Shown here: one piece after another, positions 7,419-53,711 of the stretch | How positions within the stretch are numbered: position 1 is the first letter of the stretch | How the letters are laid out: every line of letters starts with the position of its first letter | DNA from: Scyliorhinus canicula | Taxonomy: Eukaryota | Assembly: GCF_902713615.1 (NCBI RefSeq) | Contig: NC_052146.1 | Coordinates: forward strand, 270,633,350 to 270,697,349 | Length of the DNA: 64,000 nt | Direction of reading: 5' to 3' | Notes under the pieces: generated by a model | Database searches by the model: none | Seen by the model: the letters and a program-made list of their open reading frames with translations, nothing else | Told to the model about the DNA's origin: nothing | Translations under genes and position numbers: made by a program

Positions 7419-7558
7419 CAGGACTTGCTCTATCTCTCCAGAAAGACTGTGAGTGCTGTATTTCTGAAATTACAAAGGCCTGAAGGAGTCTACAGTAAAA
7501 GCCATGGATTGAAATCAAACTTTGAAGAGGAGTCAGGTGCAACTATCTGAAACACAGA

Positions 7559-11740: not shown

Positions 11741-11742
11741 CA

Positions 11743-11860: not shown

Positions 11861-11861
11861 G

Positions 11862-12205
11862 GAACTTATGGTGGTATTGTCACTGGGCTAGTAATCCAGA
11901 GACCCAGAGAAATGCTCTGGGGCCACAGGTTCAAATCCCACCATGGCAGATGGTGAAATTTGAATTGAATAAAAGCCTAATGATGACCATTAAACCATTG
12001 TCGAGTGTTGTAAATAAAATCCTTCAGGGAAGGAAATCTGCCGTCCTTACCTGGTCTGGCCTACATGTGAAGACAGACCCACACAGTGATATGGTTGACT
12101 CTCAACTGCCCCCCACTGAAATAGCCTAGCAAGCCACTCGATTCGAGGGCAATTAAAGATGGGTAACAAATGCTGGCTTGGACGCCCATATCCTAAGAAC
12201 GAATA
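11862..12205 (+). mobile_element. tRNA-derived SINE (family B), reference copy for the minisatellite
   Basis: A-box-like GTGGTATTGTCAC, anticodon-arm-like CTGGG-CTAGTAA-TCCAG, B-box GGTTCAAATCC (11928-11938). Body contains GGAAATCTGCCGTCCTTACCTGGTCTGG. Confidence 0.8.
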
Positions 12206-12263
12206 CACTAAAAAAAAAACTCAAAACATTCACACAGAATGAAAACGATCTCTCACACACATT

Positions 12264-12934
12264 GGGCGCGATTCTCCCAAAACGGGAGAAATCGTAAGGC
12301 TGGCGTCAAACCCGGGCGGGTTTGACGCCAGCGCGCCCCTTCCCGACTGGGAACCGATTCTGGTCCCCGGTCGGGGCTAGCAGCCCGACGCCGTAAGCTC
12401 TGGCATCACGGGCTTAACGAATTTCGTTAAGCCCGCTTGCCGGAGTTAGCGCTGGCTGACGCGTCATATGACGTCAGCCGCGCATGCGCGGATTGGAAGA
12501 CTCCAACCCGCGCATGCGCGGATGACGTCATCGCGTATTTGCGCGAAACCCACGCATGCGCGGGCTGGGATGCCCCTCAGCCGCCCCGCGAATGGATACT
12601 GCGGGGCGGCGGAAGGAGAAATAGTGCGCGGGCATCGGGCGTGGTACTGCCGTGCCAATCGGTGCCATGGTTATAAAAGCGAGTTGTTCCCGCCGTTTTT
12701 ACGAACGGCCAGACCAGGTGTGTTTGCCGTTCGTAAAAACAGCGTAAAGGGCTGGGACTTCGGCCCATCTATCAGCTGTGAATCGCTGCCGGCCGTAAAA
12801 AAACGGCGGCAGCGATTCGTGTCGGGAGTTGGGCGGGGGGGGGGGGGGGGGAGAATAGCGGGAGGGCAGGAAAAATGTCGGGAAGGCCCTCCCGCTATTC
12901 TCCGACCCGTCGTGGGGGGCGGAGAATCGCGCCC
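12264..12934. mobile_element. GC-rich Harbinger-type MITE (family B)
   Basis: Perfect 14-bp TIRs GGGCGCGATTCTCC / GGAGAATCGCGCCC. TSD ATT on both sides. Confidence 0.9.
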
Positions 12935-21899: not shown

Positions 21900-24230
21900 C
21901 TGAAAAATGGTGTGGCTTCCACAATGCAGAATGATCCTGCTCGTGCCTATACCACCTAGAGCCATCCTGCACCTCCTAAAGGAGAGGGGCACTGTGGCTG
22001 CAGCAGGCACTTGAAGCCATCCTGAAAGTGATTGGCACAGCGTAAGCTCCAATATTTTCTGGTGCTGCACTGGAGACTTTGGTGAAGAACTCTGTGGGGA
22101 GTCGCGATCACTCTGGATAAACTTGGCAAAGGCAGCAAGACTGGATATTCATGGCAGTAAATACCGGAGTCTGGCCCACACTCCCATCACCTACCAATCA
22201 AAATAGTTTTCAGTCAAGACCCCAACCTGCTTCATCTAATCTTCACTCTGCTACAAACCTCACATTCACTTCTCACAACTTCGCACACATTACCAGCTAA
22301 TCACCACAACAGTCATATCACCCAAATTCATTGCACCAAACTCACTGGCACACTTCTCTCTTTCTTGCAGGACAAGGTGCCACATAACTGGAGGCAGCAA
22401 GGGTTAGCAGTTAGGGACAGCCATATTTGGTTGCCTTTCTCCCCAACTGGGATGGTGTTCACCATCATTATCGAGGTTGTGGCCCGTGGCATGCTCAAAC
22501 CATTGATGATAGTCGCATTCTCACACCTAGGGGCGGAATGCTCCGACCCCCGCAGGGTCGGGGAATCGCCCGGGGCCGGCATAAATCCCGCCCCCACCGT
22601 GGCCGGAATTCTCCGGCACCCGGGAATCGGCGGGAGCGGGAATCAAGCCGCGCCGATCGATGTGCCCCCCGCGGTGATTCTCCAGCCCGCGATGGGCCGA
22701 ACACCCTCCGCTGACAATCCTCTCCCGCCGGCGGGAATTTTGGAGCACCTCTGGTGCCGGCGAGATTGGCGGCGCGAGCGGGCCCCGGGGGGGGGGGGGG
22801 GGGGGGGGGGGGGAGAGGGGGGGGGCGCACGCGGGTCGATCGGACCCCACGGTGGCCTGGCCCGCGATTGGCAGATGGCCTAGTGCCGCATTGGCACTCT
22901 TTTTCTTCTGCTGCCGCCACGGTCTCCACAATGGCGGAGGCGGAAGAGACCCCCCTTACCGCGCATGCGCCGGTGGTGACGTCGGCGACCGCTGTCGGCC
23001 AGCCCCGACTGCGGGCGGCGGGCATCAAAGGCCGTTGGCGCCGGTTTTGGCGCCAGTTGGCGTGGCACCAACCATTCCGGCGCGGGCCTAGCCCGCACCT
23101 TTGGGGAGGCCCGACGCCGGAGTGGTTGGTGCCACTCCGCTACGCCGGGACCCCCCGCCCCGCCGGGAGAATCGCGGCCCTAACCTACCATCTCTCATCC
23201 CACTTAACGCTCAATGTCTTCTGATTTACAAGCCACAGGTAGAAAAGACAAACACCTCTTACTTCACTCCCTCTCCTCACCATCAATATACCCTTGTACC
23301 TTTTTCTTTTCAGATACTTCAGAACTGCACCCTGGTCAGGCAATGGTGGAAGAGTAAAAGATGGAAGAGCAGAAGGATAATTATGAAGGAGAAACGGCAT
23401 TACTTGCTTACACTCAGACACTAACAATGCACACAGCCTAAAGGATGACTTTGAGATAGGATCTGCACGTGGCGAGACAGGACAACAGGAGTGCCAAGTT
23501 GCCAGAAGGTGAAGGTACACATGAGTTTTTGCTGCACAGGACTCAGAGGTGAAGTTCAATGGAATGCCTACAGAAGAAGGCTCATGGTTACACAAAATGA
23601 AATGACTGACGCATTGGCAGACCTGCCAAAAACCCTAAAGTCCATGCCAAGAGTCATGGCGAAGTTCAGCACTAATATGGCACAGGTCTGTGTGCAAAGC
23701 TTGGAGCTCAACCTTTCCAACATAGAAGTGATGGCCAAATATACTTGCGCAAGTGTGGACCCAACCATGATACAAAGCCTCATGGCCATTGTCGCAGTTT
23801 CCATCAGAGCTCAAGGAAAAGCCTGGATGTTCTGACTGAAGTCATACTGGTGAGAGTGAACCAGCCCAGACTGCTGCTCCCATTCTGAGATAGTACAATC
23901 TGAATCCAGGCCCTCAAGGTCCAGAACTGTGCATGCCACTCGGAAAGATCATTTGTCAGCCCTGCAAGTGAAAGTCACCAAACATATTGCAACCGCAGGG
24001 AAACTGCTGTGAAGGAGCATTAGAACTGGCAAAGGCACATAGAAAACAGATAATAAGGGTGATTAGTTGACACGCGTGCAATAAAACATCATTTGACGTA
24101 TAATTTTCATTTGGAATGTTTACTTTCAGGCGAGGCGGCATTTATTTTAGCATTGTGGCCAGGGAAATGCTGTGATGGTCAGTGAAAGGGAAGGTGTAGG
24201 AGGACTGTTGGTGAATGGGGAATGAGGGCT
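21900..24230 (+). pseudogene. Harbinger Myb/SANT-like DNA-binding gene remnant with intron traces
   Basis: APIFSGAALETLV at ~22045. Acceptor CTTTCTTGCAG followed by DKVPHNWRQ at 22371. Second acceptor TTTCTTTCAG at ~23313. Many stops. Split by a MITE. Confidence 0.6.
22531..23180. mobile_element. GC-rich Harbinger-type MITE (family D)
   Basis: TIRs GGGCGGAATGCTCC ... GGAGAATCGCGGCC(C). Imperfect TSD (TAG/TAA or CTA). Long poly-G tract. Colinear with 20124-20827. Confidence 0.85.
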
Positions 24231-32309: not shown

Positions 32310-34198
32310 AAACATAAGAACATAAGAACTAGGAGCAGGAGTAGGCCATCTGGCCCCTCGAGCCTGCTCCGCCATTCAATTAGATCATGGCTGATCTTTT
32401 GTGGACTCAGCTCCACTTTCCGGCCCGAACACCATAACCCTTAATCCCTTTATTCTTCAAAAAACTATCTATCTTTACCTTAAAAACATGTAATGAAGGA
32501 GCCTCAACTGCTTCACTGGGCAAGGAATTCCATAGATTCACAACCCTTTGGGTGAAGAAGTTCCTCCTAAACTCAGTCCTAAATCTACTTCCCCTTATTT
32601 TGAGGCTATGCCCCCTAGTTCTGCTGTCACCCGCCAGTGGAAACAACCTGCCCGCATCTATCCTATCTATTCCCTTCATAATTTTAAATGTTTCTATAAG
32701 ATCCCCCCTCATCCTTCTAAATTCCAACGAGTACAGTCCCAGTCTACTCAACCTCTCCTCATAATCCAACCCCTTCAGCTCTGGGATTAACCTAGTGAAT
32801 CTCCTGTGCACACCCTCCAGTGCCAGTACGTCCTTTCTCAAGTAAGGAGACCAGAACTGAACACAATACTCCAGGTGTGGCCGCACTAACACCTTATACA
32901 ATTGCAACATAACCTCCCTAGTCTTAAACTCCATCCCTCTAGCAATGAAGGACAAAATTCCATTTGCCTTCTTAATCACCTGTTGCACTTGTAAACCAAC
33001 CTTCTGTGACTCATGCACTAGCACACCCAAGTCTCTCTGAACAGCGGCATGCTTTAATATTTTATCGTTTAAATAATAATCCCGTTTGCTGTTATTCCTA
33101 CCAAAATGGATAACCTTACATTTGTCAACATTGTATTCCATCTGCCAGACCCGAGCCCATTCACTTAACCTATCCAAATCCCTCTGCAGACTTCCAGTAT
33201 CCTCTGCACTTTTCGCTTTACCACTCATCTTAGTGTCATCTGCAAACTTGGACACATTGCCCTTGGTCCCCAACTCCAAATCATCTATGTAAATTGTGAA
33301 CAATTGTGGGCCCAACACGGATCCCTGAGGGACACCACTAGCTACTGATTGCCAACCAGAGAAACACCCATTTATCCCAACTCTTTGCTTTCTATTAATT
33401 AACCAATCCTCTATCCATGCTACTACTTTACCCTTAATGCCATGCATCTTTATCTTATGCAGCAACCTTTTGTGTGGCACCTTGTCAAAGGCTTTCTGGA
33501 AATCCAGATATACCACATCCATCGGCTCCCCGTTATCTACTGCACTGGTAATGTCCTCAAAAAATTCCACTAAATTAGTTAGGCATGACATGCCTTTAAC
33601 GAACCCATGCTGCGTCTGCCCAATGGGACAATTTCTATCCAGATGCCTCGCAATTTCTTCCTTGATGATAGATTCCAGCATCTTCCCTATTACCGAAGTT
33701 AAACTCACTGGCCTATAATTTCCTGCTTTCTGCCTACCTCCTTTTTTAAACAGTGGCGTCACGTTTGCTAATTTCCAATCCACCGGGACCACCCCAGAGT
33801 CTAGTGAATTTCGGTAAATTATCACTAGTGCATCTGCAATTTCCCTAGCCATCTCTTTTAGCACTCTGGGATGCATTCCATCAGGGCCAGGAGACTTGTC
33901 TACCTTTAGCCCCATTAGCTTGCCCATCACTCCCTCCTTAGTGATAACAATCCTCTCAAGGTCCTCACCTGTCATAGCCTCATTTCTATCAGTCGCTGGC
34001 ATGTTATTTGTGTCTTCCACTGTGAAGACCGACCCAAAAAACTTGTTCAGTTCCTCAGCCATTTCCTCATTTCCCATTATTAAAACTCCCTTCTCATCCT
34101 CTAAAGGACCAATATTTACCTTAGCCACTCTTTTTTGTCTTATATATTTGTAAAAACTTTTACTGTCTGTTTTTATATTCTGAGCAAGTTTACTCTCA
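32310..34198 (-). mobile_element. Young 5'-truncated CR1 LINE
   Basis: Uninterrupted ORF2 3' portion, 3' UTR and (TTCTTATG)n tail (AACATAAGAACATAAGAA on + strand). No obvious TSD. Confidence 0.95.
32407..34128 (-). CDS. CR1 ORF2 reverse transcriptase, C-terminal 573 aa (no endonuclease domain; 5'-truncated)
   Basis: NYRPVSLTS, QHGF, YLDFQKAFDKV, GVPQGSVLGP, FADD, LVRPHLEYCVQFW motifs. No internal stops. Confidence 0.85.
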   Translation of the reverse strand: MAKVNIGPLEDEKGVLIMGNEEMAEELNKFFGSVFTVEDTNNMPATDRNEAMTGEDLERIVITKEGVMGKLMGLKVDKSPGPDGMHPRVLKEMAREIADALVIIYRNSLDSGVVPVDWKLANVTPLFKKGGRQKAGNYRPVSLTSVIGKMLESIIKEEIARHLDRNCPIGQTQHGFVKGMSCLTNLVEFFEDITSAVDNGEPMDVVYLDFQKAFDKVPHKRLLHKIKMHGIKGKVVAWIEDWLINRKQRVGINGCFSGWQSVASGVPQGSVLGPQLFTIYIDDLELGTKGNVSKFADDTKMSGKAKSAEDTGSLQRDLDRLSEWARVWQMEYNVDKCKVIHFGRNNSKRDYYLNDKILKHAAVQRDLGVLVHESQKVGLQVQQVIKKANGILSFIARGMEFKTREVMLQLYKVLVRPHLEYCVQFWSPYLRKDVLALEGVHRRFTRLIPELKGLDYEERLSRLGLYSLEFRRMRGDLIETFKIMKGIDRIDAGRLFPLAGDSRTRGHSLKIRGSRFRTEFRRNFFTQRVVNLWNSLPSEAVEAPSLHVFKVKIDSFLKNKGIKGYGVRAGKWS

Positions 34199-35465: not shown

Positions 35466-37559
35466 TACGTCTTCAAATGCTCCGTCTTACCAACTGCACT
35501 ACATCTGAAGACAATGCATTAATCACCACACCCCCATCACTCATAAACCAATAATCTCTATCAATCAGGCCTCATACCGAATATTAATAGCTCCATCTTT
35601 CCCGCTCATCACTCATATGCTGCCTCTGCCTTGCTGTTGCCTGTCATCCAGCCCAGGCATATGCTTGTTATGTCAAAGACCTTCTAATCAGAGAGCTGCT
35701 AGAGTTCATCCTCAAGGACCATCTACAGTCTCCGCCAATGAAAGTCAGCAGCTTTTCACCAGTAATGTTGCCTCTGGGGTAGCACTGCATCTTTTGATTT
35801 CTCTGTCAAAGAAGGCGGCGGCGGCAGGGTCATTGAATATTTTTCTGGCGTATGTAGACAGATTCTCGTTAAGCTAGGAAATGAAAGGTTATCAGGGGTA
35901 GATGGAAATGTAAAATTGGAAACACAAACAGATCAGCCAAGAACTTACTGAATGGCAGAGAGGCTGGAGAGGTCAAATGGTCTACTTCTGCTGCTCTTTC
36001 GTATATACATATACTGGTGACCGGACGTTTGACCGAAGATGCGCATCGAGAACCTTGTGGAAGTCCTGACACACAGACCTCGATGGGACTTGCCCAGGAA
36101 GGTTCAACTTCCAATGCACAATTCCCCTGTTGCCCAAGACCATCCACAAATGTCTCCAACTCTGAACTAGAATTGATACTTACCTGTGTAGTTAACAGAT
36201 AAGACAGATTAAAACCTAGTCTAGCTCATGGGTAATTACGCATTCAAACTCCAATCAGCCCTCTCACCCTCCAATCACACTCACTTGAGTACCTCCCTGA
36301 CCCAACCCGACTAGCAACCCCACCCCCCCCCCCCCTCCCCCCACCGACCTGACCCAACCAAACCCCTCACCCGACCTGACAACCATGGACCACCCAACTC
36401 GCCGCCAACTTTGCTCCAATCCTACTCAACCACCTATCTTACCCACCCTACCCACTTACCCCCACCCACCTCACCTACTTATCCCTACCCATCCACCCAT
36501 TTGCCCAAATCATCCACTTACTTACGTCATCCACATGCTCCCCTATCCTCACTCACCTATCCTCTACACACCTCAATTATCTACCCACCTATCCACTTAC
36601 CTTCCTCACCTACATACCCAAACACCCACTTATCCCCTACCCAGTTACTCACCTTACCACCTACCACCCTGCCCGCATACCAACCTACCCATTCACTCGC
36701 TCACCCCGTCACTCATTCTACTCTCCTGTTCACTATTATTCAAACTGGAGTTTTAAACCTACCTTACAGTAACTAGTGCCATCAAAAGGGGGCATGCCCT
36801 GTCTTCCCTGGACTCTACTCCCCTCCAAAGGATTTCCCCAGGAGATGCTGTGCTGTGGATTTCTGTGAAAGTTAGGTTTGGAAAACCCCGGTAGAAGTGC
36901 AAAGCAGTGGCGAATCAGAGGATTTAACATTCATTGTCACTACTCAGAAGATCCATGCCATTAAGTGCTTGCTACTATCTTTACCAAAAGGTTTCTTGTT
37001 TGCATGTGTCGCAAGTTATGCTGCAGGCATCGCTTACCGATCCCTAAGAGCACTCTAAGCACCAACAGGGCTGGTGCTGTGGTGCCTAATTTCTTGCCAC
37101 AACTGTTCTACATGTATTGAAGTCATGCACCATTCCTATGTACAAAACACCTCAACGTATTCCTGGCATTTTTGACCGAAGCATAACATTTTCTCCTGAT
37201 TAACCAGCGTTTTATTTTTAAATTTTCTCTCTATTTCTCCTGGCTCATGCTGAGGCACAGGTCTACATGTGCAAGAACCCCGCATCTCACCTGTGTGGAC
37301 ACTCTCCATCATACGATCTTAAATAACAATTTCAGCAGAGTATTTAATCCTGATGGCCTCACATCCAAGTGGCAATCATGTTCTTAATGGGCATGGGTAA
37401 ATCCTCACTATCCAGCAAAGACCACTGGACGCAATCAGGAGCAAGGTCGATGGCCAATTCTTCACCTCTTTAACCCAGCTTTTATGGCTCAACTCAGTAA
37501 AGTCTATTACCAACTCCTGCCTTTTGAAATGGCACGTTCCATTTAATTAATTTTACATA

Positions 37560-38700: not shown

Positions 38701-41143
38701 ATATCTATGTTCCATTTTAGGTTATTTTTCTTCCACCATTAGTCGAGAATGGACAGATGACGATGCCCAAAAGGGCAGTTCTGCAAAAATTTGAATTCTA
38801 AATTTACAGACATCCTGAAGCAAACAGCATAACATTTGTACAGCATGCAAGAAACAATACTTTTCACTGTATACTAATACATGTGACAATAATAAATCAA
38901 ATCAAATCAAAAATCAAAACATTTCTTGACAAACAAGTCACATACATAGCAGGATTTGACGGTCCGGGTACATAACTGCTTATCCATGTTGTTGCTCTAC
39001 AGTCACAATTCAACCAGGACCACGGGTCAGAAGAAAATAAATACTGTGGTTACATAACCTACACTTTGTCAAAAAAAAATCTTGTTTATCTGTAGCAACC
39101 ACAGCAAATTATCACTGTGTGTTAGTTAATCCCCCCATTTTGAATTGCAGCTGATTTGCGAGATATTTTCTCTGCAATGCAAGCATGTCTATAAGAAGTA
39201 CAAACATGTTCCAAAATGGTTGCATAATGTTATTTACATTTCAGAGCTGTAATTACCATGCTAAAATTTGGCAAGGATTCCCAATCAGAGATAAAGGAAG
39301 AAATGCTGTGAAGTGGCTTGGCTTGTTAACAGTCGGACCTGCAAAACCCATAAGAATACTTTTTCTGTCACTTAATATGTTTTCATCTCTGGGCCTTGGA
39401 TGTGTGAGCTTAATGTTCTGCATTGCTGGGTTCTTGATTTTTAAAAACAATTGATGGGTCAAATGTCACAGGAGCATTGAGTGAAATCAGGAAGAATTAC
39501 GGTTTTCTATTTCAACCTGAAAATGTGCGCACTGCCTGTGGGTTCTGTCCCGTTTCTGGTCGCTGTTTTTCACTCAATGGTTTCGGATCCCACTGATGCA
39601 AACCTAGCAAGTATGAAATGGAAGTGACCTTTCTATCCACAAGCAAACAGTTGTCTGATGGCAATCTAATGGGCTACTGGTAGATAGTTGATCATTTACT
39701 TTTACATGTGAAACTATAGTTGCTTCAGTCCCTGAAATCAGATTTTGGGGTACTATCGCACAGATATTTAATGCATTTATTTGAAATTGCTCTCTCTACT
39801 ATTTCGATAGCTCAACCAAAGTAGACGGTATTTTCAGATAGGTGCATTAAGCATATGAAACATAGTACATGAGTAATCTGTGACACAGAGTGCAGCATGC
39901 TTGAGAGAAACAGTTGATTTAGAGTGCTGGATTTTCACAAGGTCGCAATGACTCCAGGGACCTTCAGAAATGGCAGGCATGTCCTGACCGAGGTTCCTGC
40001 CTCTATCCCATTTCCGGCAATTTTTGCCAGCCGGATAGGTAAACTCCCAAACTGGCTGGCCCTTTTGTAGGGGTTGGCATCTCAAACCGCCTCCTCCCTC
40101 CCCAGCACCACCTCCCAAGATTTCTGTGCAGTTTCCCGAGGACCCATAAGTGTTGTGAGCCATAGTCTGGGTTTGGGTACCTTTTGGCAGGCAGTTTATA
40201 AGTTTTACCCATGTCCCCTCATAACCACCATGCCCATATGCCTGCCCTTTGCAATCCATGCACCTTCGTGCCTTGATGTGCCCTCCATGCGCACCCCCAC
40301 CCCCGCATTCTCCATCCCCACTCACCCAGAATGAACTATGTACAGAACCAATGAATCACTTAATAAAAGTGGCAAGTCTTAATGAGGCCACCTGGAGAAA
40401 CCGATGTCACCCCATCTATTTATGTTGATACAGTTGCCAGATGGCCTAATTTTGAATACTTCCCTGAGCTCCAAGACCGACGAATGGAATTGGCTCAGCA
40501 GGGCTTGTTGAAAGGAAATGTTAGGTTTGATTATTTGCCAACTTTATGAGGTTATGGTAATATTCTTGTATTATTATAATATTCTATAATACCTAGTATG
40601 CCTTTCTTGAATTAGTTTTCTCAATGTATATATGTTTATTTGGATAAGATTAAAAAGTGTAAAGTTCGGTAAAGCCTATGCTAGTGAGACTATGAATGGC
40701 TGTGTCTGATTGATGCTTTTATAATGTTGTATGAGCAGTAGTTCTTTCAGAAGGATATTTCCAAATCTTGTGGTTTTTCTCATGAGCTTTTCAATATTCC
40801 GCAGGCCGAACACTGTCTAATGTATTTGCATAAAATGCCATCTTCATTTCGGCCAAGTGAAGATGGCACTGTATAACATCAGGGTGTGGTTCAGCATAGT
40901 GTACCCAGCTAAATTGAGGGTGACCTACAACTCCAAAGACCTTTATTTCGAGACGGTGGAAGTGGCAGAGGTATTTGTGAAGGCAGAAGGACTGGGGCAG
41001 AAGTGAGAAATGGGACTGAGGATGGGTCTTGGACTGAGGGTAGGGGGGTGGAGGAGTGTATATAGCTCTATTTTTCACTGCATGTTGTTGTTATATGTGC
41101 TAAATGAGTTGAAGTTGCTGATCTGGACAAGGCAAGAGTTGAC

Positions 41144-42097
41144 GGGCGTGATTCTCCGCTCCCCACGCCGGGTGGGAGAATCGCGGAGGGCCAGGCGACT
41201 CACGACACGCACCCCTGGCGCCCCCCGCGATTCTCCCACACCCTGCTCGGAAGAATCGGCGCTCGCCATTTTTCACGGCGACCGGATATTCTCCGACCCG
41301 GATGGGCTGAGCGGCCTGGCGTTCGCGACGGGTTCACGAGGGTGGCAACCACACCTGGTCGCTGCTGTCGTGAACATTGGCGCCAAACGCTGGTTTGACG
41401 CTTGTGGGGGGCAGAGAGGGGAGTGAGCACCTCGGCCGTGCTCGGGAGGGGACTGGCCTGCGATCGGTGCCCACCGATCGCCGGGCCGGCGTCTCAAGGG
41501 GACGGACGCTTTCCCCTCCGCCGCCCCGCAAGATCAAGCCGCCACGTCTTGTGGGGCGGTGGAGGGGAAGACGGTAACCGCGCATGTGCGGGTTGGCGCC
41601 GGCCAACCTGCGCATACACGGCTGACGTCATTGGGCGCGCCGGCTGCGTCATTCTCGGCGCGTCAGGCCTTGACGCCAGCGACGTCACGACAGCTGACGG
41701 CTGAAACCCGTGCATGCGCGGTTGACGTCTTCCTCTCCGCTGCCCCGCAAGACGTGGCGGCTTGATCTTGCGGGGCGGCAGAGGGGAAAGAGTCCGTCCC
41801 CTTGAGACGCCGGCCCGACGATCGGTGGGCACCGATCGCGGGCCAGTCCCCTCCCGAGCACGGTAGTGGTGCTCACTCCCCTCTCTGCCCCCCACAAGCC
41901 ACAAAACAGCTGCTGGCGCCATGTTCATGCCGGCAGCGACCAGGTGTGGTTTCCGCCAGCGTGAACCTGTCAGGAACGGCGACCCGCGATTCTCCGAGCG
42001 GCGTGTCGCGTTTTGGGGGGGTGGGGGAATCGCGGGCGGTGCCAGAGCGGCCCTCCCGCGATTCTCCCACACGGCGTAGGAGCGGAGTATCGCGTCC
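41144..42097. mobile_element. Palindromic head-to-head fusion of two family-A MITE halves
   Basis: Both ends are the same terminus (GGGCG.GAT.CTCCGCTCC..ACGCCG.GTGGGAGAATCGCG). Orientation flips near 41680. Flanks GAC/AAG do not form a TSD. Confidence 0.85.
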
Positions 42098-42228
42098 AAG
42101 GAGAGGGGGGAAATATATATATATAAAGAAAGACAAGAAATAAATAAAAGGTTAAAGACAGTTAAAATGAAAACAAAAGTGTTGAGGTGAGATAGATCGA
42201 ATCATCTGAAGTTGTTTGTCAAAGTCGG

Positions 42229-45200
42229 ATCCACAGACCAGGGGTAGTAATCCAGAGACCCGGAGTAGTAACCCAGAGACCCAGGGTAGTAATCCAGAGA
42301 CCCGGGGTAGTAATCCACAGACCCAGGGTAGTAATCCACAGACCCGGGGTAGTAATCCAGAGACCCGGGGTAGTAATCCACAGACCCGGGGTAGTAATCC
42401 ACAGACCCGGGGTAGTAATCCACAGACCCGGGGTAGTAATCCAGAGACCGGGGATAGTAATCCAGAGACCTGGGGTAGTAATCCAGAGACCCGGGGTAGT
42501 AATCCACACACCCGGGGTAGTAATCCAGAGACCCGGGGTAGTAATCCAGAGACCCGGGGTAGAAATCCAGAGACCGGGCGTAGTAATCCAGAGACCCAGG
42601 GTAGTAATCCACAGACCCTGGGTAGTAATCCACAGACCCGGGGTAGTAATCCACAGACCCGGGGTAGTAATCCACAGACCCGGGGTAGTAATCCACAGAC
42701 CTGGGGTAGTAATCCACAGACCCGGGGTAGTAATCCACAGACCCGGGGTAGTAATCCAGAGACCGGGGATAGTATTCCAGAGACCTGGGGTAGTAATCCA
42801 GAGACCCGGGGTAGTAATCCACAGACCCGGGGTAGTAATCCAGAGACCCGGGGTAGTAATCCAGAGACCCGGGGTAGAAATCCAGAGACCGGGGGTAGTA
42901 ATCCAGAGACCCAGGGTAGTAATCCACAGACCCTGGGTAGTAATCCACAGACCCGGGGTAGTAATCCACAGACCCGGGGTAGTAATCCACAGACCCGGGG
43001 TAGTAATCCACAGACCCGGGGTAGTAATCCACAGACCCGGGGTAGCAATCCACAGACCCGGGGTAGTAATCCACAGACCCAGGGTAGTAATCCACAGACC
43101 CGGGGTAGTAATCCAGAGACCCGGGGTAGTAATCCAGAGACCTGGGGTAGTAATCCACAGACCCGGGGTAGTAATCCAGAGACCGGGGATAGTAATCCAG
43201 AGACCCGGGGTAGTAATCCAGAGACCCGGGGTAGTAATCCAGAGACCGGGGATAGTAATCCAGAGACCTGGGGTAGTAATCCAGAGACCCTGGGTAGTAA
43301 TCCACAGACCCGGGGTAGTAATCCACAGACCCGGGGTAGTAATCCAGAGACCCGGGGTAGTAATCCAGAGACCGGGGGTAGTAATCCAGAGACCCAGGGT
43401 AGTAATCCACAGACCCTGGGTAGTAATCCACAGACCCGGAGTAGGAATCCACAGACCCGGGGTAGTAATCCAGAGACCCGGGGTAGTAATCCAGAGATCC
43501 GGGGTAGTAATCCAGAGACCCGGGGTAGTAATCCAGAGACCGGGGATAGTAATCCAGAGACCCGGAGTAGTATCCACAGACCCGGGATAGTAGTCCAGAG
43601 ACCCGGGGTAGTAATCCAGAGACCTGGGGTAGTAATCCAGAGACCCGGGATAGTAGTCCAGAGACCCGGGGTAGTAATCCACAGACCCGGGGTAGTAATC
43701 CAGAGACCCGGGATAGTAATCCAGAGACCCGGGGTAGTAATCCAGAGACCCGGAATAGTAATCCACAGACCCGGGGTAGTAATCCAGAGACCCGGAGTAG
43801 TAATCCACAGTCCCGGGATAGTAATCCAGAGACCCGGGATAGTAATCCAGAGACCCGGGGTAGTAATCCAGAGACCCGGGGTAGTAATCCAGAGACCCGG
43901 GGTAGTAATCCAGAGACCCGGGGTAGTAATCCAGAGACCCGGGGTAGTAATCCAGAGACCCGGGGTAGTAATCCAGAGACCCGGGGCAGTAATCCACAGA
44001 CCCAGGGTAGTAATCCAGAGACCCGGGGTAGTAAACCAGAGACCCAGGGTAGTAATCCAGAGACCCGGGGTAGTAATCCAGAGATCCGGGGTAGTAATCC
44101 ACAGACCCGGGGTAGTAATCCAGAGACCGGGGTAGTAATCCAGAGACCCGGGGTAGTAATCCAGAGACCCGGGGTAGTAATCCACAGACCCGGGGTAGTA
44201 ATCCACAGACCCGGGGTAGTAATCCACAGACCCGGGGTAGTAATCCACAGACCCGGGGTAGCAATCCACAGACCCGGGGTAGTAATCCACAGACCCGGGG
44301 TAGTAATCCACAGACCCGGGGTAGTAATCCAGAGACCCGGGGTAGTAATCCAGAGACCTGGGGTAGTAATCCACAGACCCGGGGTAGTAATCCAGAGACC
44401 GGGGATAGTAATCCAGAGACCCGGGGTAGTAATCCAGAGACCCGGGGTAGTAATCCAGAGACCGGGGATAGTAATCCAGAGACCTGGGGTAGTAATCCAG
44501 AGACCCTGGGTAGTAATCCACAGACCCGGGGTAGTAATCCACAGACCCGGGGTAGTAATCCAGAGACCCGGGGTAGTAATCCAGAGACCGGGGTAGTAAT
44601 CCAGAGACCCAGGGTAGTAATCCACAGACCCTGGGTAGTAATCCACAGACCCGAAGTAGGAATCCACAGACCCGGGGTAGTAATCCAGAGACCCGGGGTA
44701 GTAATCCAGAGATCCGGGGTAGTAATCCAGAGACCCGGGGTAGTAATCCAGAGACCGGGGATAGTAATCCAGAGACCCGGAGTAGTATCCACAGACCCGG
44801 GATAGTAGTCCAGAGACCCGGGGTAGTAATCCAGAGACCTGGGGTAGTAATCCAGAGACCCGGGATAGTAGTCCAGAGACCCGGGGTAGTAATCCACAGA
44901 CCCGGGGTAGTAATCCAGAGACCCGGGATAGTAATCCAGAGACCCGGGGTAGTAATCCAGAGACCCGGAATAGTAATCCACAGACCCGGGGTAGTAATCC
45001 AGAGACCCGGAGTAGTAATCCACAGTCCCGGGATAGTAATCCAGAGACCCGGGATAGTAATCCAGAGACCCGGGGTAGTAATCCAGAGACCCGGGGTAGT
45101 AATCCAGAGACCCGGGGTAGTAATCCAGAGACCCGGGATAGTAATCCAGAGACCCGGGGTAGTAATCCAGAGACCCGGGGTAGTAATCCAGAGACCCGGG

Positions 45201-48200
45201 GCAGTAATCCACAGACCCAGGGTAGTAATCCAGAGACCCGGGGTAGTAAACCAGAGACCCAGGGTAGTAATCCAGAGACCCGGGGTAGTAATCCAGAGAT
45301 CCGGGGTAGTAATCCACAGACCCGGGGTAGTAATCCAGAGACCGGGGTAGTAATCCAGAGACCCGGGGTAGTAATCCAGAGACCCGGGGTAGTAATCCAG
45401 AGACCCGGGGTAGTAATCCAGAGACCCGGGGTAGTAATCCACAGACCCGGGGTAGAAATCCAGAGACCCGGGGTAGTAATCCAGAGACCCGGGGTGGTAA
45501 TACAGAGACCCAGGGTAGTAATCCACAGACCCGGGGTAGTAATCCAGAGACCCAGGGTAGTAATCCACAGACCCGGGGTAGTAATCCACAGACCTGGGGT
45601 AGTAATCCAGAGACCCGGGATAGTAATCCAGAGACCCGGAGTACAAATCCAGAGACCCGGGGTAGTAATCCACAGAACCGGGGTAGTAATCCAGAGACCC
45701 GGAGTACAAATCCAGAGACCCGGGATAGTAATCCAGAGACCTGGGGTAGTAATCCAGAGACCTGGGGTAGTAATCCAGAGACCTGGGGTAGTAATCCAGA
45801 GACCCGGGGTAGTAATCCACAGACCCGGGGTAGTAATCCACAGACCTGGGGTAGTAATCCAGAGACCTGGGATAGTAATCCAGAGACCCGGGGTAGTAAT
45901 CCACAGACCCGGGGTAGTAATCCACAGACCCGGGGTAGTAATCCACAGACCCGGGGTAGTAATCCACAGACCTGGGGTAGTAATCCAGAGACCCGGGATA
46001 GTAATCCAGAGACCCGGAGTACAAATCCAGAGACCCGGGATAGTAATCCAGAGACCCGGGGTAGTAATCCAGAGACCCGGAGTAGTAATCCACAGACCCG
46101 GGGTAGTAATCCACAGACCCGGGGTAGTAATCCAGAAACCCGGAGTACAAATCCAGAGACCCGGGATAGTAATCCACAGACCCGGGGTAGTAATCCAGAG
46201 ACCCAGGGTAGTAATCCACAGACCCGGAGTACAAATCCAGAGACCCGGGATAGTAATCCAGAGACCCGGGATAGTAATCCAGAGACCCGGAGTACAAATC
46301 CAGAGACCCGGGATAGTAATCCAGAGACCTGGGGTAGTAATCCAGAAACCCGGAGTACAAATCCAGAGACCCGGGATAGTAATCCAGAGACCTGGGGTAG
46401 TAATCCAGAGAACCGGGGTAGTAATCCAGAGACCCGGGGTAGTAATCCAGAGTCCCGGGGTAGTAATCCACAGACCCGGGGATAGTAATCCAGAGACCCG
46501 GGGTAGTAATCCAGAGACCCGGGGTAGTAATCCAGAGTCCCGGGGTAGTAATCCACAGACCCGGGATAGTAATCCAGAGACCCGGGGTAGTAATCCAGAG
46601 ACCCGGGATAGTAATCCAGAGACCCGGGGTAGTAATCCAGAGTCCCGGGGTAGTAATCCACAGACCCGGGATAATAATCCAGAGACCCGGGGTAGTAATC
46701 CAGAGTCCCGGGGTAGTAATCCACAGACCCGGGATAGTAATCCAGAGTCCCGGGGTAGTAATCCACAGACCCGGGATAGTAATCCAGAGACCCGGGGTAG
46801 TAATCCAGAGACCCGGGGTAGTAATCCAGAGACCTGGGGTAGTAATCCAGAGACCCGGAGTACAAATCCAGAGACCCGGGATAATAATCCAGAGACCCGG
46901 GGTAGTAAGTCAGAGACCCGGAGTACAAATCCAGAGACCCGGGGTAGTAATCCACAGACCCGGGGTAGTAATCCAGAGACCCGGAGTACAAATCCACAGA
47001 CCCGGGATAGTAATCCAGAGACCTGGGGTAGTAATCCAGAGACCTGGGGTAGTAATCCAGAGACCTGGAGTAGTAATCCAGAGAACCGGGGTAGTAATCC
47101 AGAGACCCGGGGTAGTAATCCAGAATCCCGGGGTAGTAATCCACAGTCCCGGGGATAGTAATCCAGAGACCCGGGGTAGTAATCCAGAGACCCGGGGTAG
47201 TAATCCAGAGTCCCGGGGTAGTAATCCACAGACCCGGGATAGTAATCCAGAGACCCGGGGTAGTAATCCAGAGACCCGGGATAGTAATCCAGAGAACCGG
47301 GGTAGTAATCCAGAGTCCCGGGGTAGTAATCCACAGACCCGGGATAGTAATCCAGAGACCCGGGGTAGTAATCCAGAGTCCCGGGGTAGTAATCCACAGA
47401 CCCGGGATAGTAATCCAGAGTCCCGGGGTAGTAATCCACAGACCCGGGACAGTAATCCAGAGACCCGGGGTAGTAATCCAGAGACCCGGGGTAGTAATCC
47501 AGAGACCTGGGGTAGTAATCCAGAGACCCGGAGTACAAATCCAGAGACCCGGGATAATAATCCAGAGACCCGGGGTAGTAATCCAGAGACCCGGAGTACA
47601 AATCCAGAGACCCGGGGTAGTAATCCACAGACCCGGGGTAGTAATCCAGAGACCCGGAGTACAAATCCACAGACCCGGGATAGTAATCCAGAGACCTGGG
47701 GTAGTAATCCAGAGACCTGGGGTAGTAATCCAGAGACCTGGAGTAGTAATCCAGAGACCGGGGGTAGTAATCCAGAGACCCGGAGTACAAATCCACAGAC
47801 CCGGGATAGTAATCCAGAGACCTGGGGTAGTAATCCAGAGACCTGGGGTAGTAATCCAGAGACCTGGAGTAGTAATCCAGAGACTCAGGGTAGTAATCCA
47901 CAGACCCGGGGTAGTAATCCAGAGACCCGGGGTAGTAATCCAGAGACCAGGGGTAGTAAACCAGAGACCTGGAGTAGTAATCCAGAGACCCGGGGTAGTA
48001 ATCCAGAGACCCAGGGTAGTAATCCAGAGACCCGGGGTAGCAATCCAGAGACCCAGGGTAGTAATCCTGAGACCCTGGGTAGTAATCCAGAGACCCGGGG
48101 TAGTAAACCAGAGACCCGGGGCAGCAATCCAGAGACCCAGGGCAGTAATCCAGTGACCCGGGGTAGTAAACCAGAGACCCGGGGCAGTAATCCAGAGACC

Positions 48201-48500
48201 CGGGGTAGTAATCCACAGACCCGGGGTAGTAATCCAGAGACCCGGGGTAGTAATCCACAGACCCGGGGTAGTAATCCACAGACCCGGAGTAGTAATCCAG
48301 AGACCCGGGGTAGTAATCCAGAGACCCGGGGTAGTAATCCACAGACCCAGGGTAGTAATCCACAGACCCAGGGTAGTAATCCAGAGACCCGGGGTAGTAA
48401 TCCAGAGACCCGGGGTAGTTATCCAGAGACCTGGGGTAGTAATCCAGAGACCCGGGGTAGTAATCCACAGACCCGGGGTAGTAATCCACAGACCCGGGGT
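42229..48500 (+). repeat. 21-bp minisatellite, ~300 units, consensus GGGGTAGTAATCCA(G/C)AGACCC
   Basis: Directly visible tandem array of ~6.27 kb. Occasional 20- and 22-bp units. Variant units cluster regionally. Confidence 0.99.
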
Positions 48501-48730
48501 AATGCCCTGCAGTCCCAGGTTCAAATTCCTACACTGCAGATGGAATTAAAAGTCGAGTGATGACCATGAAACCACTGTCGATTGTCATAAACACCCATCT
48601 GGTTCCCTAATGTCCTATAGAGAAGGAAATCTGCCATCCTTACTTGGTCTGGCTGACATGTGACTCTACACCCACAGCAATGTGCTTGACTTCAACTGTC
48701 CCCTCAAGGCTATTTAGGAATGGGGATAAA
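48501..48730 (+). mobile_element. 3' part of SINE family B, contiguous with the minisatellite
   Basis: AATGCCCTG...GGTTCAAATTCC (48518-48529)...TGATGACCATGAAACC...GGAAATCTGCCATCCTTAC.TGGTCTGG, colinear with 11911-12170. Confidence 0.88.
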
Positions 48731-48892
48731 TACTTGCATTTGTAATGCAACTTTCACATCTTGGGGAAGTCCAGAAGTTTACAGCCAATGAAGTACTTTT
48801 GAAGTGTTGTTCTAATGTGGGAAACATAGCTCAAATCATAGCACAAGCACTTCACAATAGAACACTGAGCTGCTGTGTTTCTGGGCTGCCTG

Positions 48893-49208
48893 ATTGGATT
48901 GGATTGGATTTGTTTATTGTCACGTGTACCGAGGTAAAGTGAAAAGTATTTTTCTGCGAGCAGTTCAATAGATCATTAAGTACATGGGAAGAAAAGGGAA
49001 CAAAAGAAAATACATAATAGGGCAACACAAGGTATACAATGTAACTACATAAGCACCGGCATCGGATGAAGCATACAGGGTTCAGTGTAATGAGATCAGT
49101 CCATAAGAGGGTCATTTAGGAGTCTGGTAACAGCGGAGAAGAAGCTGTTTTTGAAGAAGCTGTTAGTACGTGTTCTCAGACTTCTGTGTCTCCTGCCCGA
49201 TGGAAGAA
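48893..49208 (-). mobile_element. Rex1/Babar LINE 3' end
   Basis: Reverse complement of 16430-16773, including the (GGATT)n tail. Confidence 0.88.
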
Positions 49209-49727
49209 TCCCAATTCAATATATGTCAAAGAGTGACTTGAAGCCCATGGAATGTGGTACAGTAGATGTGTCTGCATTAATTAGTAAATATAGGTGAAAT
49301 GTAGGAATTAAATTGTATTTCATCTCATGCTAGGCCACATGGAAGTCACAGTGCATGCGGTTTGCCGCACTGATTCTCTTTTGGTTGAACCTGATTAAAT
49401 CAATCGAGAAACTGATCACAGTGAACCAATCAGAAAAGCTCTTACATGAGGCCTTGGAATGATAGATAAATCAATGGATCGAAAGCGATCTATCAGGCAA
49501 TAAATGAATTCACCTCCTCTCTCAAGGTAATTGTGTATATCTTAGACACTAGCCAATGTCAAGCAACATTCTCCAACCAAGAAGGTTGGCAGGAAACCTG
49601 CTAGCGGCCTCTTGGAAAACACAATAGGTATTCCTCCCTAAAGAAATGATGTGGAGATGCCGGCGTTGGACTGGGGTGAGCACAGTAAGAAGTCTTACAA
49701 CACCAGGTTAAAGTCCAACAGGTTTGT

Positions 49728-49913: not shown

Positions 49914-51705
49914 TCAGTCGGTAGGCCTCTGCAAGTCCAGGCTTGTTGGTGGGGGCCGAATGTAATGCGACATGAATCCCAGATCCCGGTTGAGTCCGCA
50001 TTCATGCGTGCGGAACTTAGCTATAAGTTTTTGCTCAGCAATTTTGCGTTGTCGCGTCTCCTGAAGGCCTCCTTGTAGAATGCTGACCCGGAGATCAGAG
50101 GCTGAATGTCCTTGACTGCTGAAGTGTTCCCCAACTGGAAGGGAACAGTCCTGCCTGTTGATAGTCGCACGATGCCCGTTTATTCGTTGTCGCAGTGTCT
50201 GCATGGTCTCGCCAATGTACCACGCTTCGGGACATCCTTTCCTGCAGCGTATGAGGTAGACTACATTGGTCGAGTCGCACGAGTATGCGCCGCGTACCTG
50301 GTGGGTGGTGTTTCCACGTGTAATGGTGGTGTCCATGTCGATGATCTGGCATGTCTTGCAGAGATTACCCTGGCAGGGTTTTGTGGTGTTGTGGTTGCTG
50401 TTCTGAAGGCTGGGTAATTTGCTGCAAACAATGGTTTGTTTGAGGTTGCGCGGTTGTTTGAAGGCCAGTAGTGGGGGTGTGGGGATGACCTTGGCAAGAT
50501 GTCCATCCTCGCTGATGATGTGTTGGAGGCTGCGAAGAAGATGTCGTAGTTTCTCCGCCCCAGGAAAGTACTGGACGACGAAGGGTACTCTGTCAGTGGT
50601 GTCCCGTGTTTGTCTTCTGAGGAGGTCGGTGCGGTTTTTTGCTGTGGCGCGGTGGAACTGTCGATCAATGAGTCGAGCGCCATATCCCGTTCGTACGAGG
50701 GCATCTTTCAGCATCTGTAGGTGTCTGTTGCGCTCCTCCTTGTCTGAGCAGATCCTGTGTATACGGAGGGCTTGTCCATAGGGGATGGCTTCTTTAATGT
50801 GTTTCGGGTGAAAGCTGGAGAAGTGGAGCATCGTGAGATTATCTGTGGGCTTGCGGTAAAGCGAGGTGCTGAGGTGACCGTCCTTGATGGAGACGAGTGT
50901 GTCCAAGAATGGAACTGAATTTGGAGAATAGTCCATGGTGAGTTTGATGGTGGGATGGAACTTATTGATGTCATCGTGTAGTCGTTTCAGTGATGTCTCG
51001 CCGTGGGTCCAAAGGAAAAAAATGTCATCGATGTATCTGGTGTATAGCATCGGTTGAAAGTCCTGTGTGGTGAGGAAGTCCTGTTCAAACTTGTGCATGA
51101 AGATGTTGGCATATTGAGGTGCAAATTTGGTCCCCATGGCTGTTCCGTGCGTCTGGATGAAGAATTTGTTGTCGAAGGTGAAGACGTTGTGGTCTAGAAT
51201 GAAACGGATGAGTTGCAGAATTGCGTCTGGAGATTGGCAGCTGTCGGTGTTGAGGACTGAGGCTGTTGCAGCAATGCCGTCGTCATGGGGGATGCTGGTG
51301 TAGAGTGCCGAGACATCCATTGTGACGAGGAATGTTCCTGGTTCAACTGGTCCATGGGTGCTGAGTTTCTGTAGGAAGTCCGTCGTGTCGCGACAGAAGC
51401 TGGGTGTACCTTGTACGATGGGTTTCAAGATGCCCTCGATGTGGCCAGAGAGGTTCTCACACAGGGTCCCATTGCCTGAAACGATAGGACGGCCTGGTGT
51501 GTTGGCCTTGTGTATTTTCGGGAGGCAGTAGAGATCTCCAATGCGGGGATTACGTGGGATGAGAGCACGTAGGGTGTTCTGAAGGTCTGGATCTAAGGTC
51601 TTGATCAGTCTGCTGAGTTGGCGGATGTGTTCCTTGGTTGGATCTGCGGGTAACTGCCTGTAGTGTTCCTGGTTGTCGAGTTGTCGGTATACTTCTTTGC
51701 AGTAG
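49914..51705 (-). CDS. Penelope RT plus GIY-YIG endonuclease, 5'-truncated, uninterrupted
   Basis: MDVSALYTSIP, GTAMGTKFAPQYANIFM, RYIDDIF, FLD, LYRKPT, CxxxxCxxC, NVVYLIRC...WYIGET, R..H, GLN. The ORF track calls 504 aa from 51428; the frame continues upstream toward the junction. Confidence 0.9.
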
Positions 51706-53711
51706 GACCCCTCCGGAAGGCCGCTGCCCTAGACTCGACATGTATGCTCAAGCTGTCAGAAGTCGTGTCAATGCCAGATTCATCACTCGCAATCACAAGG
51801 CAGCCTCAAACGTCACCCAAGCACAACGCAACGCCATCCGCACTCTCAAGACCAACCGCAACATCGTCATCAAACCAGCAGACAAAGGAGGGGCCACCGT
51901 CATACTGAACAGAACAGACTACTGCAAAGAAGTATACCGACAACTCGACAACCAGGAACACTACAGGCAGTTACCCGCAGATCCAACCAAGGAACACATC
52001 CGCCAACTCAGCAGACTGATCAAGACCTTAGATCCAGACCTTCAGAACACCCTACGTGCTCTCATCCCACGTAATCCCCGCATTGGAGATCTCTACTGCC
52101 TCCCGAAAATACACAAGGCCAACACACCAGGCCATCCTATCGTTTCAGGCAATGGGACCCTGTGTGAGAACCTCTCTGGCCACATCGAGGGCATCTTGAA
52201 ACCCATCGTACAAGGTACACCCAGCTTCTGTCGCGACACGACGGACTTCCTACAGAAACTCAGCACCCATGGACCAGTTGAACCAGGAACATTCCTCGTC
52301 ACAATGGATGTCTCGGCACTCTACACCAGCATCCCCCATGACGACGGCATTGCTGCAACAGCCTCAGTCCTCAACACCGACAGCTGCCAATCTCCAGACG
52401 CAATTCTGCAACTCATCCGTTTCATTCTAGACCACAACGTCTTCACCTTCGACAACAAATTCTTCATCCAGACGCACGGAACAGCCATGGGGACCAAATT
52501 TGCACCTCAATATGCCAACATCTTCATGCACAAGTTTGAACAGGACTTCCTCACCACACAGGACTTTCAACCGATGCTATACACCAGATACATCGATGAC
52601 ATTTTTTTTCCTTTGGACCCACGGCGAGACATCACTGAAACGACTACACGATGACATCAATAAGTTCCATCCCACCATCAAACTCACCATGGACTATTCT
52701 CCAAATTCAGTTCCATTCTTGGACACACTCGTCTCCATCAAGGACGGTCACCTCAGCACCTCGCTTTACCGCAAGCCCACAGATAATCTCACGATGCTCC
52801 ACTTCTCCAGCTTTCACCCGAAACACATTAAAGAAGCCATCCCCTATGGACAAGCCCTCCGTATACACAGGATCTGCTCAGACAAGGAGGAGCGCAACAG
52901 ACACCTACAGATGCTGAAAGATGCCCTCGTACGAACGGGATATGGCGCTCGACTCATTGATCGACAGTTCCACCGCGCCACAGCAAAAAACCGCACCGAC
53001 CTCCTCAGAAGACAAACACGGGACACCACTGACAGAGTACCCTTCGTCGTCCAGTACTTTCCTGGGGCGGAGAAACTACGACATCTTCTTCGCAGCCTCC
53101 AACACATCATCAGCGAGGATGGACATCTTGCCAAGGTCATCCCCACACCCCCACTACTGGCCTTCAAACAACCGCGCAACCTCAAACAAACCATTGTTTG
53201 CAGCAAATTACCCAGCCTTCAGAACAGCAACCACAACACCACAAAACCCTGCCAGGGTAATCTCTGCAAGACATGCCAGATCATCGACATGGACACCACC
53301 ATTACACGTGGAAACACCACCCACCAGGTACGCGGCGCATACTCGTGCGACTCGACCAATGTAGTCTACCTCATACGCTGCAGGAAAGGATGTCCCGAAG
53401 CGTGGTACATTGGCGAGACCATGCAGACACTGCGACAACGAATAAACGGGCATCGTGCGACTATCAACAGGCAGGACTGTTCCCTTCCAGTTGGGGAACA
53501 CTTCAGCAGTCAAGGACATTCAGCCTCTGATCTCCGGGTCAGCATTCTACAAGGAGGCCTTCAGGAGACGCGACAACGCAAAATTGCTGAGCAAAAACTT
53601 ATAGCTAAGTTCCGCACGCATGAATGCGGACTCAACCGGGATCTGGGATTCATGTCGCATTACATTCGGCCCCCACCAACAAGCCTGGACTTGCAGAGGC
53701 CTACCGACTGA
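51705..53711 (+). pseudogene. Penelope RT plus GIY-YIG, second copy with a +1 frameshift
   Basis: Same protein split over ORFs 51638-52654 and 52500-53711. T8 at 52602-52609 versus 7 in the other arm. Adds N-terminal TPPEG...IVIKPADKGGATVIL. Confidence 0.9.

What the first reader, a model, noticed from the sequence alone, without database searches (positions are those of the whole stretch)
42229..48730. 6.3-kb minisatellite grown out of the anticodon arm of a tRNA-derived SINE
Seen: the unit can be written TAGTAATCCAGAGACCC(G/A)GGG. TAGTAATCCAGAGACCCAG occurs once in the intact SINE at 11889. The last unit runs straight into AATGC.CTG...GGTTCAAAT(T)CC, with the same 17-nt AATGC-to-B-box spacing as the 11862 copy, and the SINE body follows to ~48730. 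The amplified piece covers the loop and 3' stem of CTGG(G/A)-CTAGTAA-TCCAG, an anticodon-arm mimic with AGT (Thr-like). Inference: slippage at a TA microhomology seeded a ~300-fold expansion between the A and B boxes, and the A-box side is missing. If the same unit has expanded independently in other copies, this SINE family seeds satellites genome-wide, either by in-situ expansion or by reverse-transcriptase stuttering during insertion.
Basis: partly seen in the sequence, partly recalled or inferred. Interest (0 to 1): 0.72.

Follow-up and report, generated by a model that had tools for sequence, protein, structure and literature searches.

The report
Shark SINE-derived 21-base minisatellite
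A 21-base piece from the tRNA-like front of a common shark jumping element (a SINE) has been copied about 300 times in a row, and the rest of the element still hangs on one end. This is a clean example of a known way that repeat arrays arise, and nothing here shows that it has a function.

Summary
A 21-bp x 299 tandem array lies at 42229-48501 (TRF score 10169). Its unit matches 11889-11909 of the only other copy of this SINE in the window. The last unit runs in register into about 205 bp of SINE (48500-~48705), with the same 17-nt spacing to the B box.

- The unit is SINE-derived. It spans the anticodon-like loop, the 3' stem and also the 5' strand of the long extra-arm hairpin.
- The head side is absent: the 5' flank is no more similar to the SINE head than shuffles are.
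- No target-site duplication, poly(A) or SINE 3' tail is left, so an origin during insertion cannot be shown.
- Three nearly identical multi-unit block duplications show growth at the DNA level in place.
- The 2-nt TA microhomology fits slippage but does not discriminate.
- Summed contig depth suggests tens to about 200 unit equivalents, against roughly 10^4 SINE bodies. That does not support a genome-wide satellite.
- A related species also holds tandem units.

The closest known kinds are the SINE-derived satellites of squamates and the Alu/B1-derived minisatellites of mammals. This is a new member of a known kind. This scan had already noted SINE-born minisatellites elsewhere in this catshark genome, one apparently from the same SINE segment. 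Interest is low to moderate.

The parts
42229..48501 (+). 21-bp minisatellite of about 299 units, consensus TAGTAATCCAGAGACCCGGGG. There are 56 unit variants. The two main types differ at unit position 11 (G 203, C 88).
   Evidence: TRF; pattern search, 294 matches against 0 expected; unit segmentation and variant counts
42229..42244 (+). 5' edge. The array starts in mid-unit (a partial unit lacking TAGTA) directly against unrelated AT-rich DNA. No SINE head or A box lies upstream.
   Evidence: Sequence; local alignment of the 200-bp flank to the SINE head scores 12 against a shuffle mean of 11.9
48479..48499 (+). Last full unit. It doubles as the resident SINE's own copy of the segment.
   Evidence: Sequence; alignment A1
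48500..48705 (+). Remainder of the SINE, in register: extra-arm loop TAATG, B-box-like GGTTCAAATTCC at 48518-48529, and the body. It is 78-83% identical to the 11862 copy. The 3' tail and poly(A) are absent.
   Evidence: blastn; MAFFT A1; spacing check and failed 3' extension
11862..12229 (+). Reference copy of the same SINE, with a poly(A) end and a single unit equivalent at 11889-11909. B-box-like motif at 11928-11938.
   Evidence: Sequence; pattern hit; fold. ARAGORN and Rfam do not call a tRNA here.
42914..45463 (+). Block duplication inside the array. About 1.34 kb (58 units) is repeated at an offset of 1216/1215 bp, with about 14 mismatches.
   Evidence: Unit-string map and lag analysis
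46377..47788 (+). Block duplication inside the array. 738 bp (32 units) is repeated at an offset of 673 bp, with 11 mismatches.
42305..43080 (+). Block duplication inside the array. 460 bp (15 units) is repeated at an offset of 315 bp, with 9 mismatches.

Best explanation
This is a SINE-derived minisatellite. A copy of an abundant shark SINE with a tRNA-like head sat at this site. A 21-nt piece of that head was duplicated in tandem: the anticodon-like loop, the 3' stem and the 5' strand of the extra-arm hairpin. The piece is bounded on both sides by the dinucleotide TA. The short tandem then grew at the DNA level to about 300 units, through replication slippage and unequal sister-chromatid or homologue exchange, in steps that included blocks of 15, 32 and 58 units. 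The SINE part 3' of the duplicated piece stayed attached as a long terminal unit. The part 5' of it (the A-box side) was lost, by deletion or during the exchanges. Shown: the homology, the register, the missing head and the block duplications. Inferred: how the first duplication arose, how the head was lost, and that the array is neutral and has no function.
For: The unit equals 11889-11909 of the other SINE copy apart from two A/G differences. The last unit runs in register into the SINE with identical 17-nt spacing to the B box, and about 205 bp of body follow. Three blocks are repeated at 98-99.5% identity inside an array whose units otherwise match at about 91%, which is the signature of unequal exchange in place. 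The commonest minor variants are C>T and G>A at the unit's CpG (31 and 20 units), as expected for ageing methylated DNA and not for a selected sequence. The anatomy, an array plus one longer terminal unit continuing into the SINE, is the main pattern described for SINE-derived satellites in squamates, with up to about 1000 units (PMC10702118). TE-derived mini- and satellites are common: 23% of them in human (PMC3389668).
Against: In-place growth from a complete SINE needs a second event to remove the head, and no trace of that event is left. The first unit is partial, which would also fit a 5'-truncated retrocopy. The microhomology is only 2 nt. The array length and both junctions rest on the assembly: no read or contig was shown to bridge them. 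The near-identical blocks could in part be assembly artefacts.
Confidence: 0.72

Rival explanations
1. Origin linked to retrotransposition. Either the partner LINE's reverse transcriptase jumped back repeatedly on the SINE RNA during insertion, or a transcript of an already expanded SINE-array master was copied in and 5'-truncated within the array (SVA-like). Later DNA-level duplications added to it.
For: The array lies on the side that is copied last in target-primed reverse transcription. It ends in mid-unit against unrelated DNA, as a 5' truncation would. The head is missing without any visible deletion scar.
Against: There is no target-site duplication. There is no poly(A) or LINE-derived 3' tail: SINE homology stops at about 48705. 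At least 2.5 kb of the array is explained by three DNA-level block duplications. A 6-kb polymerase III transcript without an A box is implausible (established knowledge of type 2 promoters). Unit dosage is no higher than this one array would give (rough).
Confidence: 0.12
2. The block was not born here. It is a fragment of an array from another locus, with its attached SINE body, moved here by segmental duplication or ectopic recombination in a repeat-rich region.
For: Both flanks are mosaics of transposon fragments. An unchecked note reports a 1.7-kb array from the same SINE part on another piece of the genome (s1-243680). A second species holds tandem units.
Against: Total unit dosage in two individuals is at or below what this one array would give (rough). 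Single-copy-depth contigs of the related species lie on the flank just after the SINE (bin 48710-48751, and 49179-49629 at about 94% identity). That fits an old, orthologous locus.
Confidence: 0.08
3. The array is real, but its length and internal block structure are inflated or scrambled by the assembler.
For: The blocks are 98-99.5% identical. Short-read contigs cannot span the array, and no long reads were available for the single reads call.
Against: The duplicated blocks differ by scattered substitutions and one 1-bp offset change (1216 against 1215), which is not what a simple collapse or expansion artefact gives. Summed depth of tens to about 200 times single copy, highest in X1, is of the order expected for a few hundred units.
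Confidence: 0.08

Closest known systems
SINE-derived satellites (sSats) of squamate reptiles (Vassetzky, Kosushkin, Ryskov 2023, PMC10702118)
   Same: A tandem array built from an internal piece of a tRNA-related SINE, here overlapping the head. One longer terminal unit continues into the rest of the SINE. There are hundreds of units (up to about 1000 in squamates). Unit similarity is about 90%, higher than between SINE copies. Locus-specific subvariants are interspersed.
   Different: The unit here is 21 nt, against 67-215 nt in squamates, so by size it is a minisatellite. The host is a cartilaginous fish and the SINE family is unrelated. Many loci per genome and a subtelomeric preference could not be tested, and the rough dosage argues for few loci.
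[quoted passage not shown]
   Same: A short internal SINE segment is amplified in place into a minisatellite. Growth is by local duplication of units. Initiation is attributed to slippage between short direct repeats or to unknown mechanisms.
   Different: Most human cases have very few units. The parent SINEs derive from 7SL RNA, not tRNA. This array is unusually long, at 6.3 kb.
VNTR composite retrotransposons (SVA, LAVA)
   Same: A SINE-related part is joined to an internal VNTR that varies by block duplication (PMC4432496, listed).
   Different: Those are mobile units with target-site duplications, poly(A) and many copies. None of these features is present or shown here.
Amphibian tRNA-related tandem families (Xenopus satellite 1/OAX, newt PolIII/TAN, Hy/PolIII)
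   Same: Tandem repeats that carry tRNA-like sequence.
   Different: Their units are 200-750 nt and hold a whole tRNA-like promoter. Their link to a SINE is doubted. Here the unit is a promoter-less fragment, and the parent SINE is attached.

Membership tests
Minisatellite | Head-to-tail array with a unit of about 10-100 bp and a length of 0.5 kb to tens of kb | tested here: met
   Period 21, 298.9 copies, 6273 bp
SINE-derived satellite (sSat sensu PMC10702118) | The repeat unit is homologous to a portion of a SINE | tested here: met
   The unit matches 11889-11909 of the SINE copy: 17/17 core, 19/21 overall
SINE-derived satellite (sSat sensu PMC10702118) | A longer terminal unit continues in register into the SINE, up to its terminus | tested here: inconclusive
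   In-register continuation for about 205 bp is shown. The SINE 3' terminus and poly(A) are not reached, and homology ends at about 48705.
SINE-derived satellite (sSat sensu PMC10702118) | The same unit forms arrays at several or many loci of the genome | not testable with these tools
   No genome-wide search was available. Leads only: the unchecked note s1-243680, tandem units in a second species, and low total dosage.
SINE-derived satellite (sSat sensu PMC10702118) | Preference for subtelomeric regions | not testable with these tools
   The chromosomal position of the window is unknown
tRNA-derived SINE (parent element) | Internal polymerase III B box | tested here: met
   GGTTCAAATCC at 11928-11938 and GGTTCAAATTCC at 48518-48529. 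The comparison with the B-box consensus is from established knowledge.
tRNA-derived SINE (parent element) | A box and a recognisable tRNA cloverleaf | tested here: not met
   ARAGORN finds no tRNA in the window. Rfam gives no tRNA match with E up to 1 at 11700-12400. The fold shows an acceptor-like stem and an extra-arm hairpin, but z is only -1.66. The one head available looks shortened in the D-arm region, so this reflects a decayed copy and says little about the family.
tRNA-derived SINE (parent element) | High copy number, dispersed | tested here: met
   Summed contig depth over 48542-48709 is 4-13 x 10^4, against single-copy contigs at 6-7, in two individuals and a related species (rough)
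VNTR composite retrotransposon (SVA-like) | Target-site duplication and a poly(A) end around the whole composite | tested here: not met
   The best flank-to-flank match is no better than shuffles, 59 of 500 reaching it. There is no poly(A) after the SINE remnant.

The most novel reading that the evidence does not exclude
The anticodon-loop to extra-arm segment of this shark SINE may be a recurrent hot spot for minisatellite birth. The same 21-nt unit would then have expanded independently, or been spread, at several loci and in at least two catshark species. That would extend SINE-derived satellites from squamates to cartilaginous fishes, and the palindromic CCCGGG core would be a candidate cause.
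Probability: 0.2. Interest if true: 0.45.

Novelty: new member of a known kind. Interest (0 to 1): 0.25.

Why it matters
The array shows its origin unusually plainly: the parent SINE is still attached in register, so the birth point of a 6-kb minisatellite can be read to the base. The authors who described SINE-derived satellites in squamates left open whether they occur outside that group, and this is a shark example of the same anatomy. It adds a data point to how satellites are born. It does not add a new mechanism, and nothing suggests a function.

Tried and rejected
1. Metagenome scan for the unit, to collect more SINE copies for a consensus. It gave 4 hits, all chance matches inside bacterial genes with no SINE context.
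2. Search for a decayed SINE head upstream of the array. The score equals the shuffle mean.
3. Search for a target-site duplication between the 5' flank and 48700-48900. Not above chance.
4. Extending the SINE remnant to 48737. Not above shuffles.
5. tRNA detection in the intact copy by ARAGORN and Rfam. No call. The below-threshold SNORA5 hit on the minus strand (27.8 bits against a gathering score of 30) is taken as chance.
6. Coding reading. ORFs of 2095-2101 aa cross the array. By my own reading of the unit, five of its six frames simply lack stop codons, and seven units of 20 or 22 nt shift the frame. Rejected.
7. Structure-driven reading. Folds of array segments are no more stable than shuffles, z -0.07 to -1.1.
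8. Transcription. A run guessed to be RNA has exact contigs on 48722-48917 and depth 8-11 on the array, but the run type is a guess and DNA carry-over is possible. No conclusion.
9. The search of earlier findings by sequence gave nothing.
10. Three literature searches for shark or catshark SINE-derived tandem repeats found no prior description. The library is partial.
11. One repeat finder failed on a parameter limit and was replaced by a script.
Full report
**Observation.** Tandem Repeats Finder reports one dominant array in the window: 42229-48501, period 21, 298.9 copies, 91% matches, no indels at its resolution, score 10169.
- The 17-nt core of the unit occurs 294 times within two mismatches, against 0 expected from shuffles.
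- The only match outside the array is at 11889-11905.
- My segmentation gives 298 units: 291 of 21 nt, five of 20 and two of 22. There are 56 sequence variants. The two commonest differ only at unit position 11 (G in 203 units, C in 88).

**Link to the SINE.** blastn finds just two copies of the element in the 64 kb. One is a nearly complete copy at 11862-12229 that ends in a poly(A). The other is the stretch that follows the array.
- The last unit is 48479-48499.
- From 48500 the sequence reads TAATGC, and 17 nt after AATGC comes the B-box-like GGTTCAAAT.
- This is the same spacing as in the 11862 copy.
- About 205 bp of SINE body then align at 78-83% identity.
- Beyond about 48705 the similarity is no better than that of shuffled sequence.

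**What the unit is.** In the 11862 copy the unit equivalent is 11889-11909. The predicted fold of that head shows two features:
- an acceptor-like stem;
- a 7-bp hairpin, 11903-11909 paired with 11915-11921, which is an extra-arm mimic.

In a 7-nt loop the middle triplet is AGT (Thr-like). That last step is inference from tRNA numbering.

The amplified piece is therefore the loop from its second base, the 3' stem, three linker bases and the 5' strand of the extra-arm hairpin. ARAGORN and Rfam do not recognise a tRNA in this decayed copy. 'tRNA-derived' thus rests on the B box, the stems and general knowledge of such SINEs.

**The edges.** The array begins in mid-unit at 42229, against AT-rich DNA.
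- The 200 bp upstream resemble the SINE head no more than shuffles do (score 12 against a mean of 11.9). The A-box side is truly absent.
- No target-site duplication links the 5' flank to the DNA after the SINE remnant.
- The segment is bounded by TA on both sides: TAGTAA at its start, TAATGC after its end. That fits slippage or microhomology-mediated duplication, but two bases are weak evidence.
- A human survey could assign only 6% of TE-derived tandem repeats to the two accepted initiation mechanisms (PMC3389668).

**How it grew.** Writing each unit variant as a letter shows long strings that recur. Three blocks are repeated:

| Block | Offset | Units | Mismatches |
|---|---|---|---|
| 42914-44248 | 1216/1215 bp | 58 | about 14 in 1343 |
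| 46377-47115 | 673 bp | 32 | 11 in 738 |
| 42305-42765 | 315 bp | 15 | 9 in 460 |

- These blocks are 98-99.5% identical, while units in general match at about 91%.
- That is the mark of recent unequal exchange or large slippage events at the DNA level.
- Together they account for about 2.5 kb of the array.
- The commonest minor variants are C>T (31 units) and G>A (20 units) at the unit's single CpG. This is the usual decay of methylated DNA.
- Folds of array segments are no more stable than shuffles.
- The giant ORFs across the array are trivial. By my own reading of the unit, five of its six frames contain no stop codon, and the 20- and 22-nt units shift the frame.

**Reads and other genomes.** The run search found holders in two coded organisms, A (eight studies) and B. 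Earlier notes of this scan call the genome a catshark.

I laid contigs of two A individuals, one B run and one run guessed to be RNA on 48374-49630 at 90% likeness.
- Organism B is a close relative. A 401-nt contig lies on 49284-49629 with 19 differences, and single-copy-depth contigs lie just after the SINE remnant.
- B also holds the tandem form: a 105-nt contig lies on five consecutive units with 10 differences.
- Summed contig depth over the unit bins is 760-1400 in X1, 100-570 in X5 and 100-1100 in X11.
- Unique contigs are at 6-7, 4.5-7 and 9 respectively.
- That gives tens to about 200 unit equivalents, no more than this one array would supply.
- The SINE body bins sum to 4-13 x 10^4 in X1, which is thousands to tens of thousands of copies.
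- The tool warns that these sums are not copy numbers, so only the order of magnitude is used.

The result gives no sign that the unit forms a large genome-wide satellite, although the parent SINE is very abundant. None of the pieces listed bridges the array-to-SINE junction, and no long reads were available, so the length and junctions rest on the assembly. The exact contigs of the possible RNA run on 48722-48917 cannot be read as transcription.

**Mechanism.** The best-supported account is a DNA-level birth and growth in place, with later loss of the head. Shown: homology, register, missing head, block duplications. Inferred: the first duplication, how the head was lost, and neutrality.

- A retrotransposition-linked origin is not excluded, because the array lies on the late-copied side and ends in mid-unit. 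This could be reverse-transcriptase jumping or a 5'-truncated copy of an expanded master.
- None of its hallmarks is present, however, and a 6-kb polymerase III product without an A box is implausible.
- Arrival by segmental duplication, and inflation of the length by the assembler, are minor rivals.

**Comparison with what is known.** TE-derived minisatellites are common.
- At least 23% of human mini- and satellites derive from TEs (PMC3389668).
- Alu-derived minisatellites and a mouse VNTR family expanded from B1 are listed in a review (PMC9659126).
- The closest match in anatomy is the SINE-derived satellites of squamates. These are arrays of an internal SINE piece with one longer terminal unit continuing into the SINE. 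They reach up to about 1000 units and about 90% unit similarity, with interspersed locus-specific subvariants (PMC10702118).
- Those authors left open whether such satellites exist outside squamates.
- The differences here are the short 21-nt unit, the host, and the lack of evidence for many loci.
- Three literature searches found no description of this in sharks, but the library is partial.

**Earlier notes of this scan.** SINE-born minisatellites have been noted several times on other DNA of this genome:
- a 33-bp unit from a DeuSINE at four loci (s1-236530);
- 29-bp SINE-head arrays before IgM genes (s1-286338, s1-243509);
- a cluster of retroelement-seeded arrays (s1-203739);
- a SINE-minisatellite-SINE block (s1-240135);
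- an unchecked 1.7-kb 'minisatellite built from the anticodon arm of a tRNA-Thr-like SINE head' (s1-243680), which may be a second locus of this very unit.

I could not test any of these.

**Verdict.** The feature is real and cleanly resolved. It is a SINE-derived minisatellite, a new member of a known kind, most likely neutral. Interest is 0.25.

Noticed in passing
window 5266-5400 (element on the minus strand, about 5170-5480): A copy of a different shark SINE carries a 52-bp internal tandem repeat of 2.6 copies at 89% match. This is a small-scale example of the same process, the 'library of short tandems' stage.
   Followed up: partly
window 41140-42100: A 65% GC block lies directly upstream of the array. 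It has internal inverted symmetry and ends that carry CGCGATTCTCC in both orientations. The motif occurs 18 times in the window in paired clusters (7344-7600, 12267-12931, 41147-42094), against 0.35 expected. This looks like a foldback or MITE-type DNA element family.
   Followed up: partly
window 22787-22825: A run of 39 G at 89% purity.
   Followed up: no
window 32407-34128 (-), 49914-51428 (-), 51638-52654 (+): ORFs with reverse-transcriptase domains (RVT_1, E 4e-33, 1e-9 and 2e-8). The array sits in retroelement-rich DNA, and no host gene was seen among the long ORFs.
   Followed up: partly
window 48722-48917: A run whose type is only guessed to be RNA holds exact contigs on the unique DNA just 3' of the SINE remnant, at depth 17-34. 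This may be transcription through the locus or DNA carry-over.
   Followed up: no
window 36441-36594: Two short C/A-rich imperfect tandems, with periods of 23 and 14.
   Followed up: no
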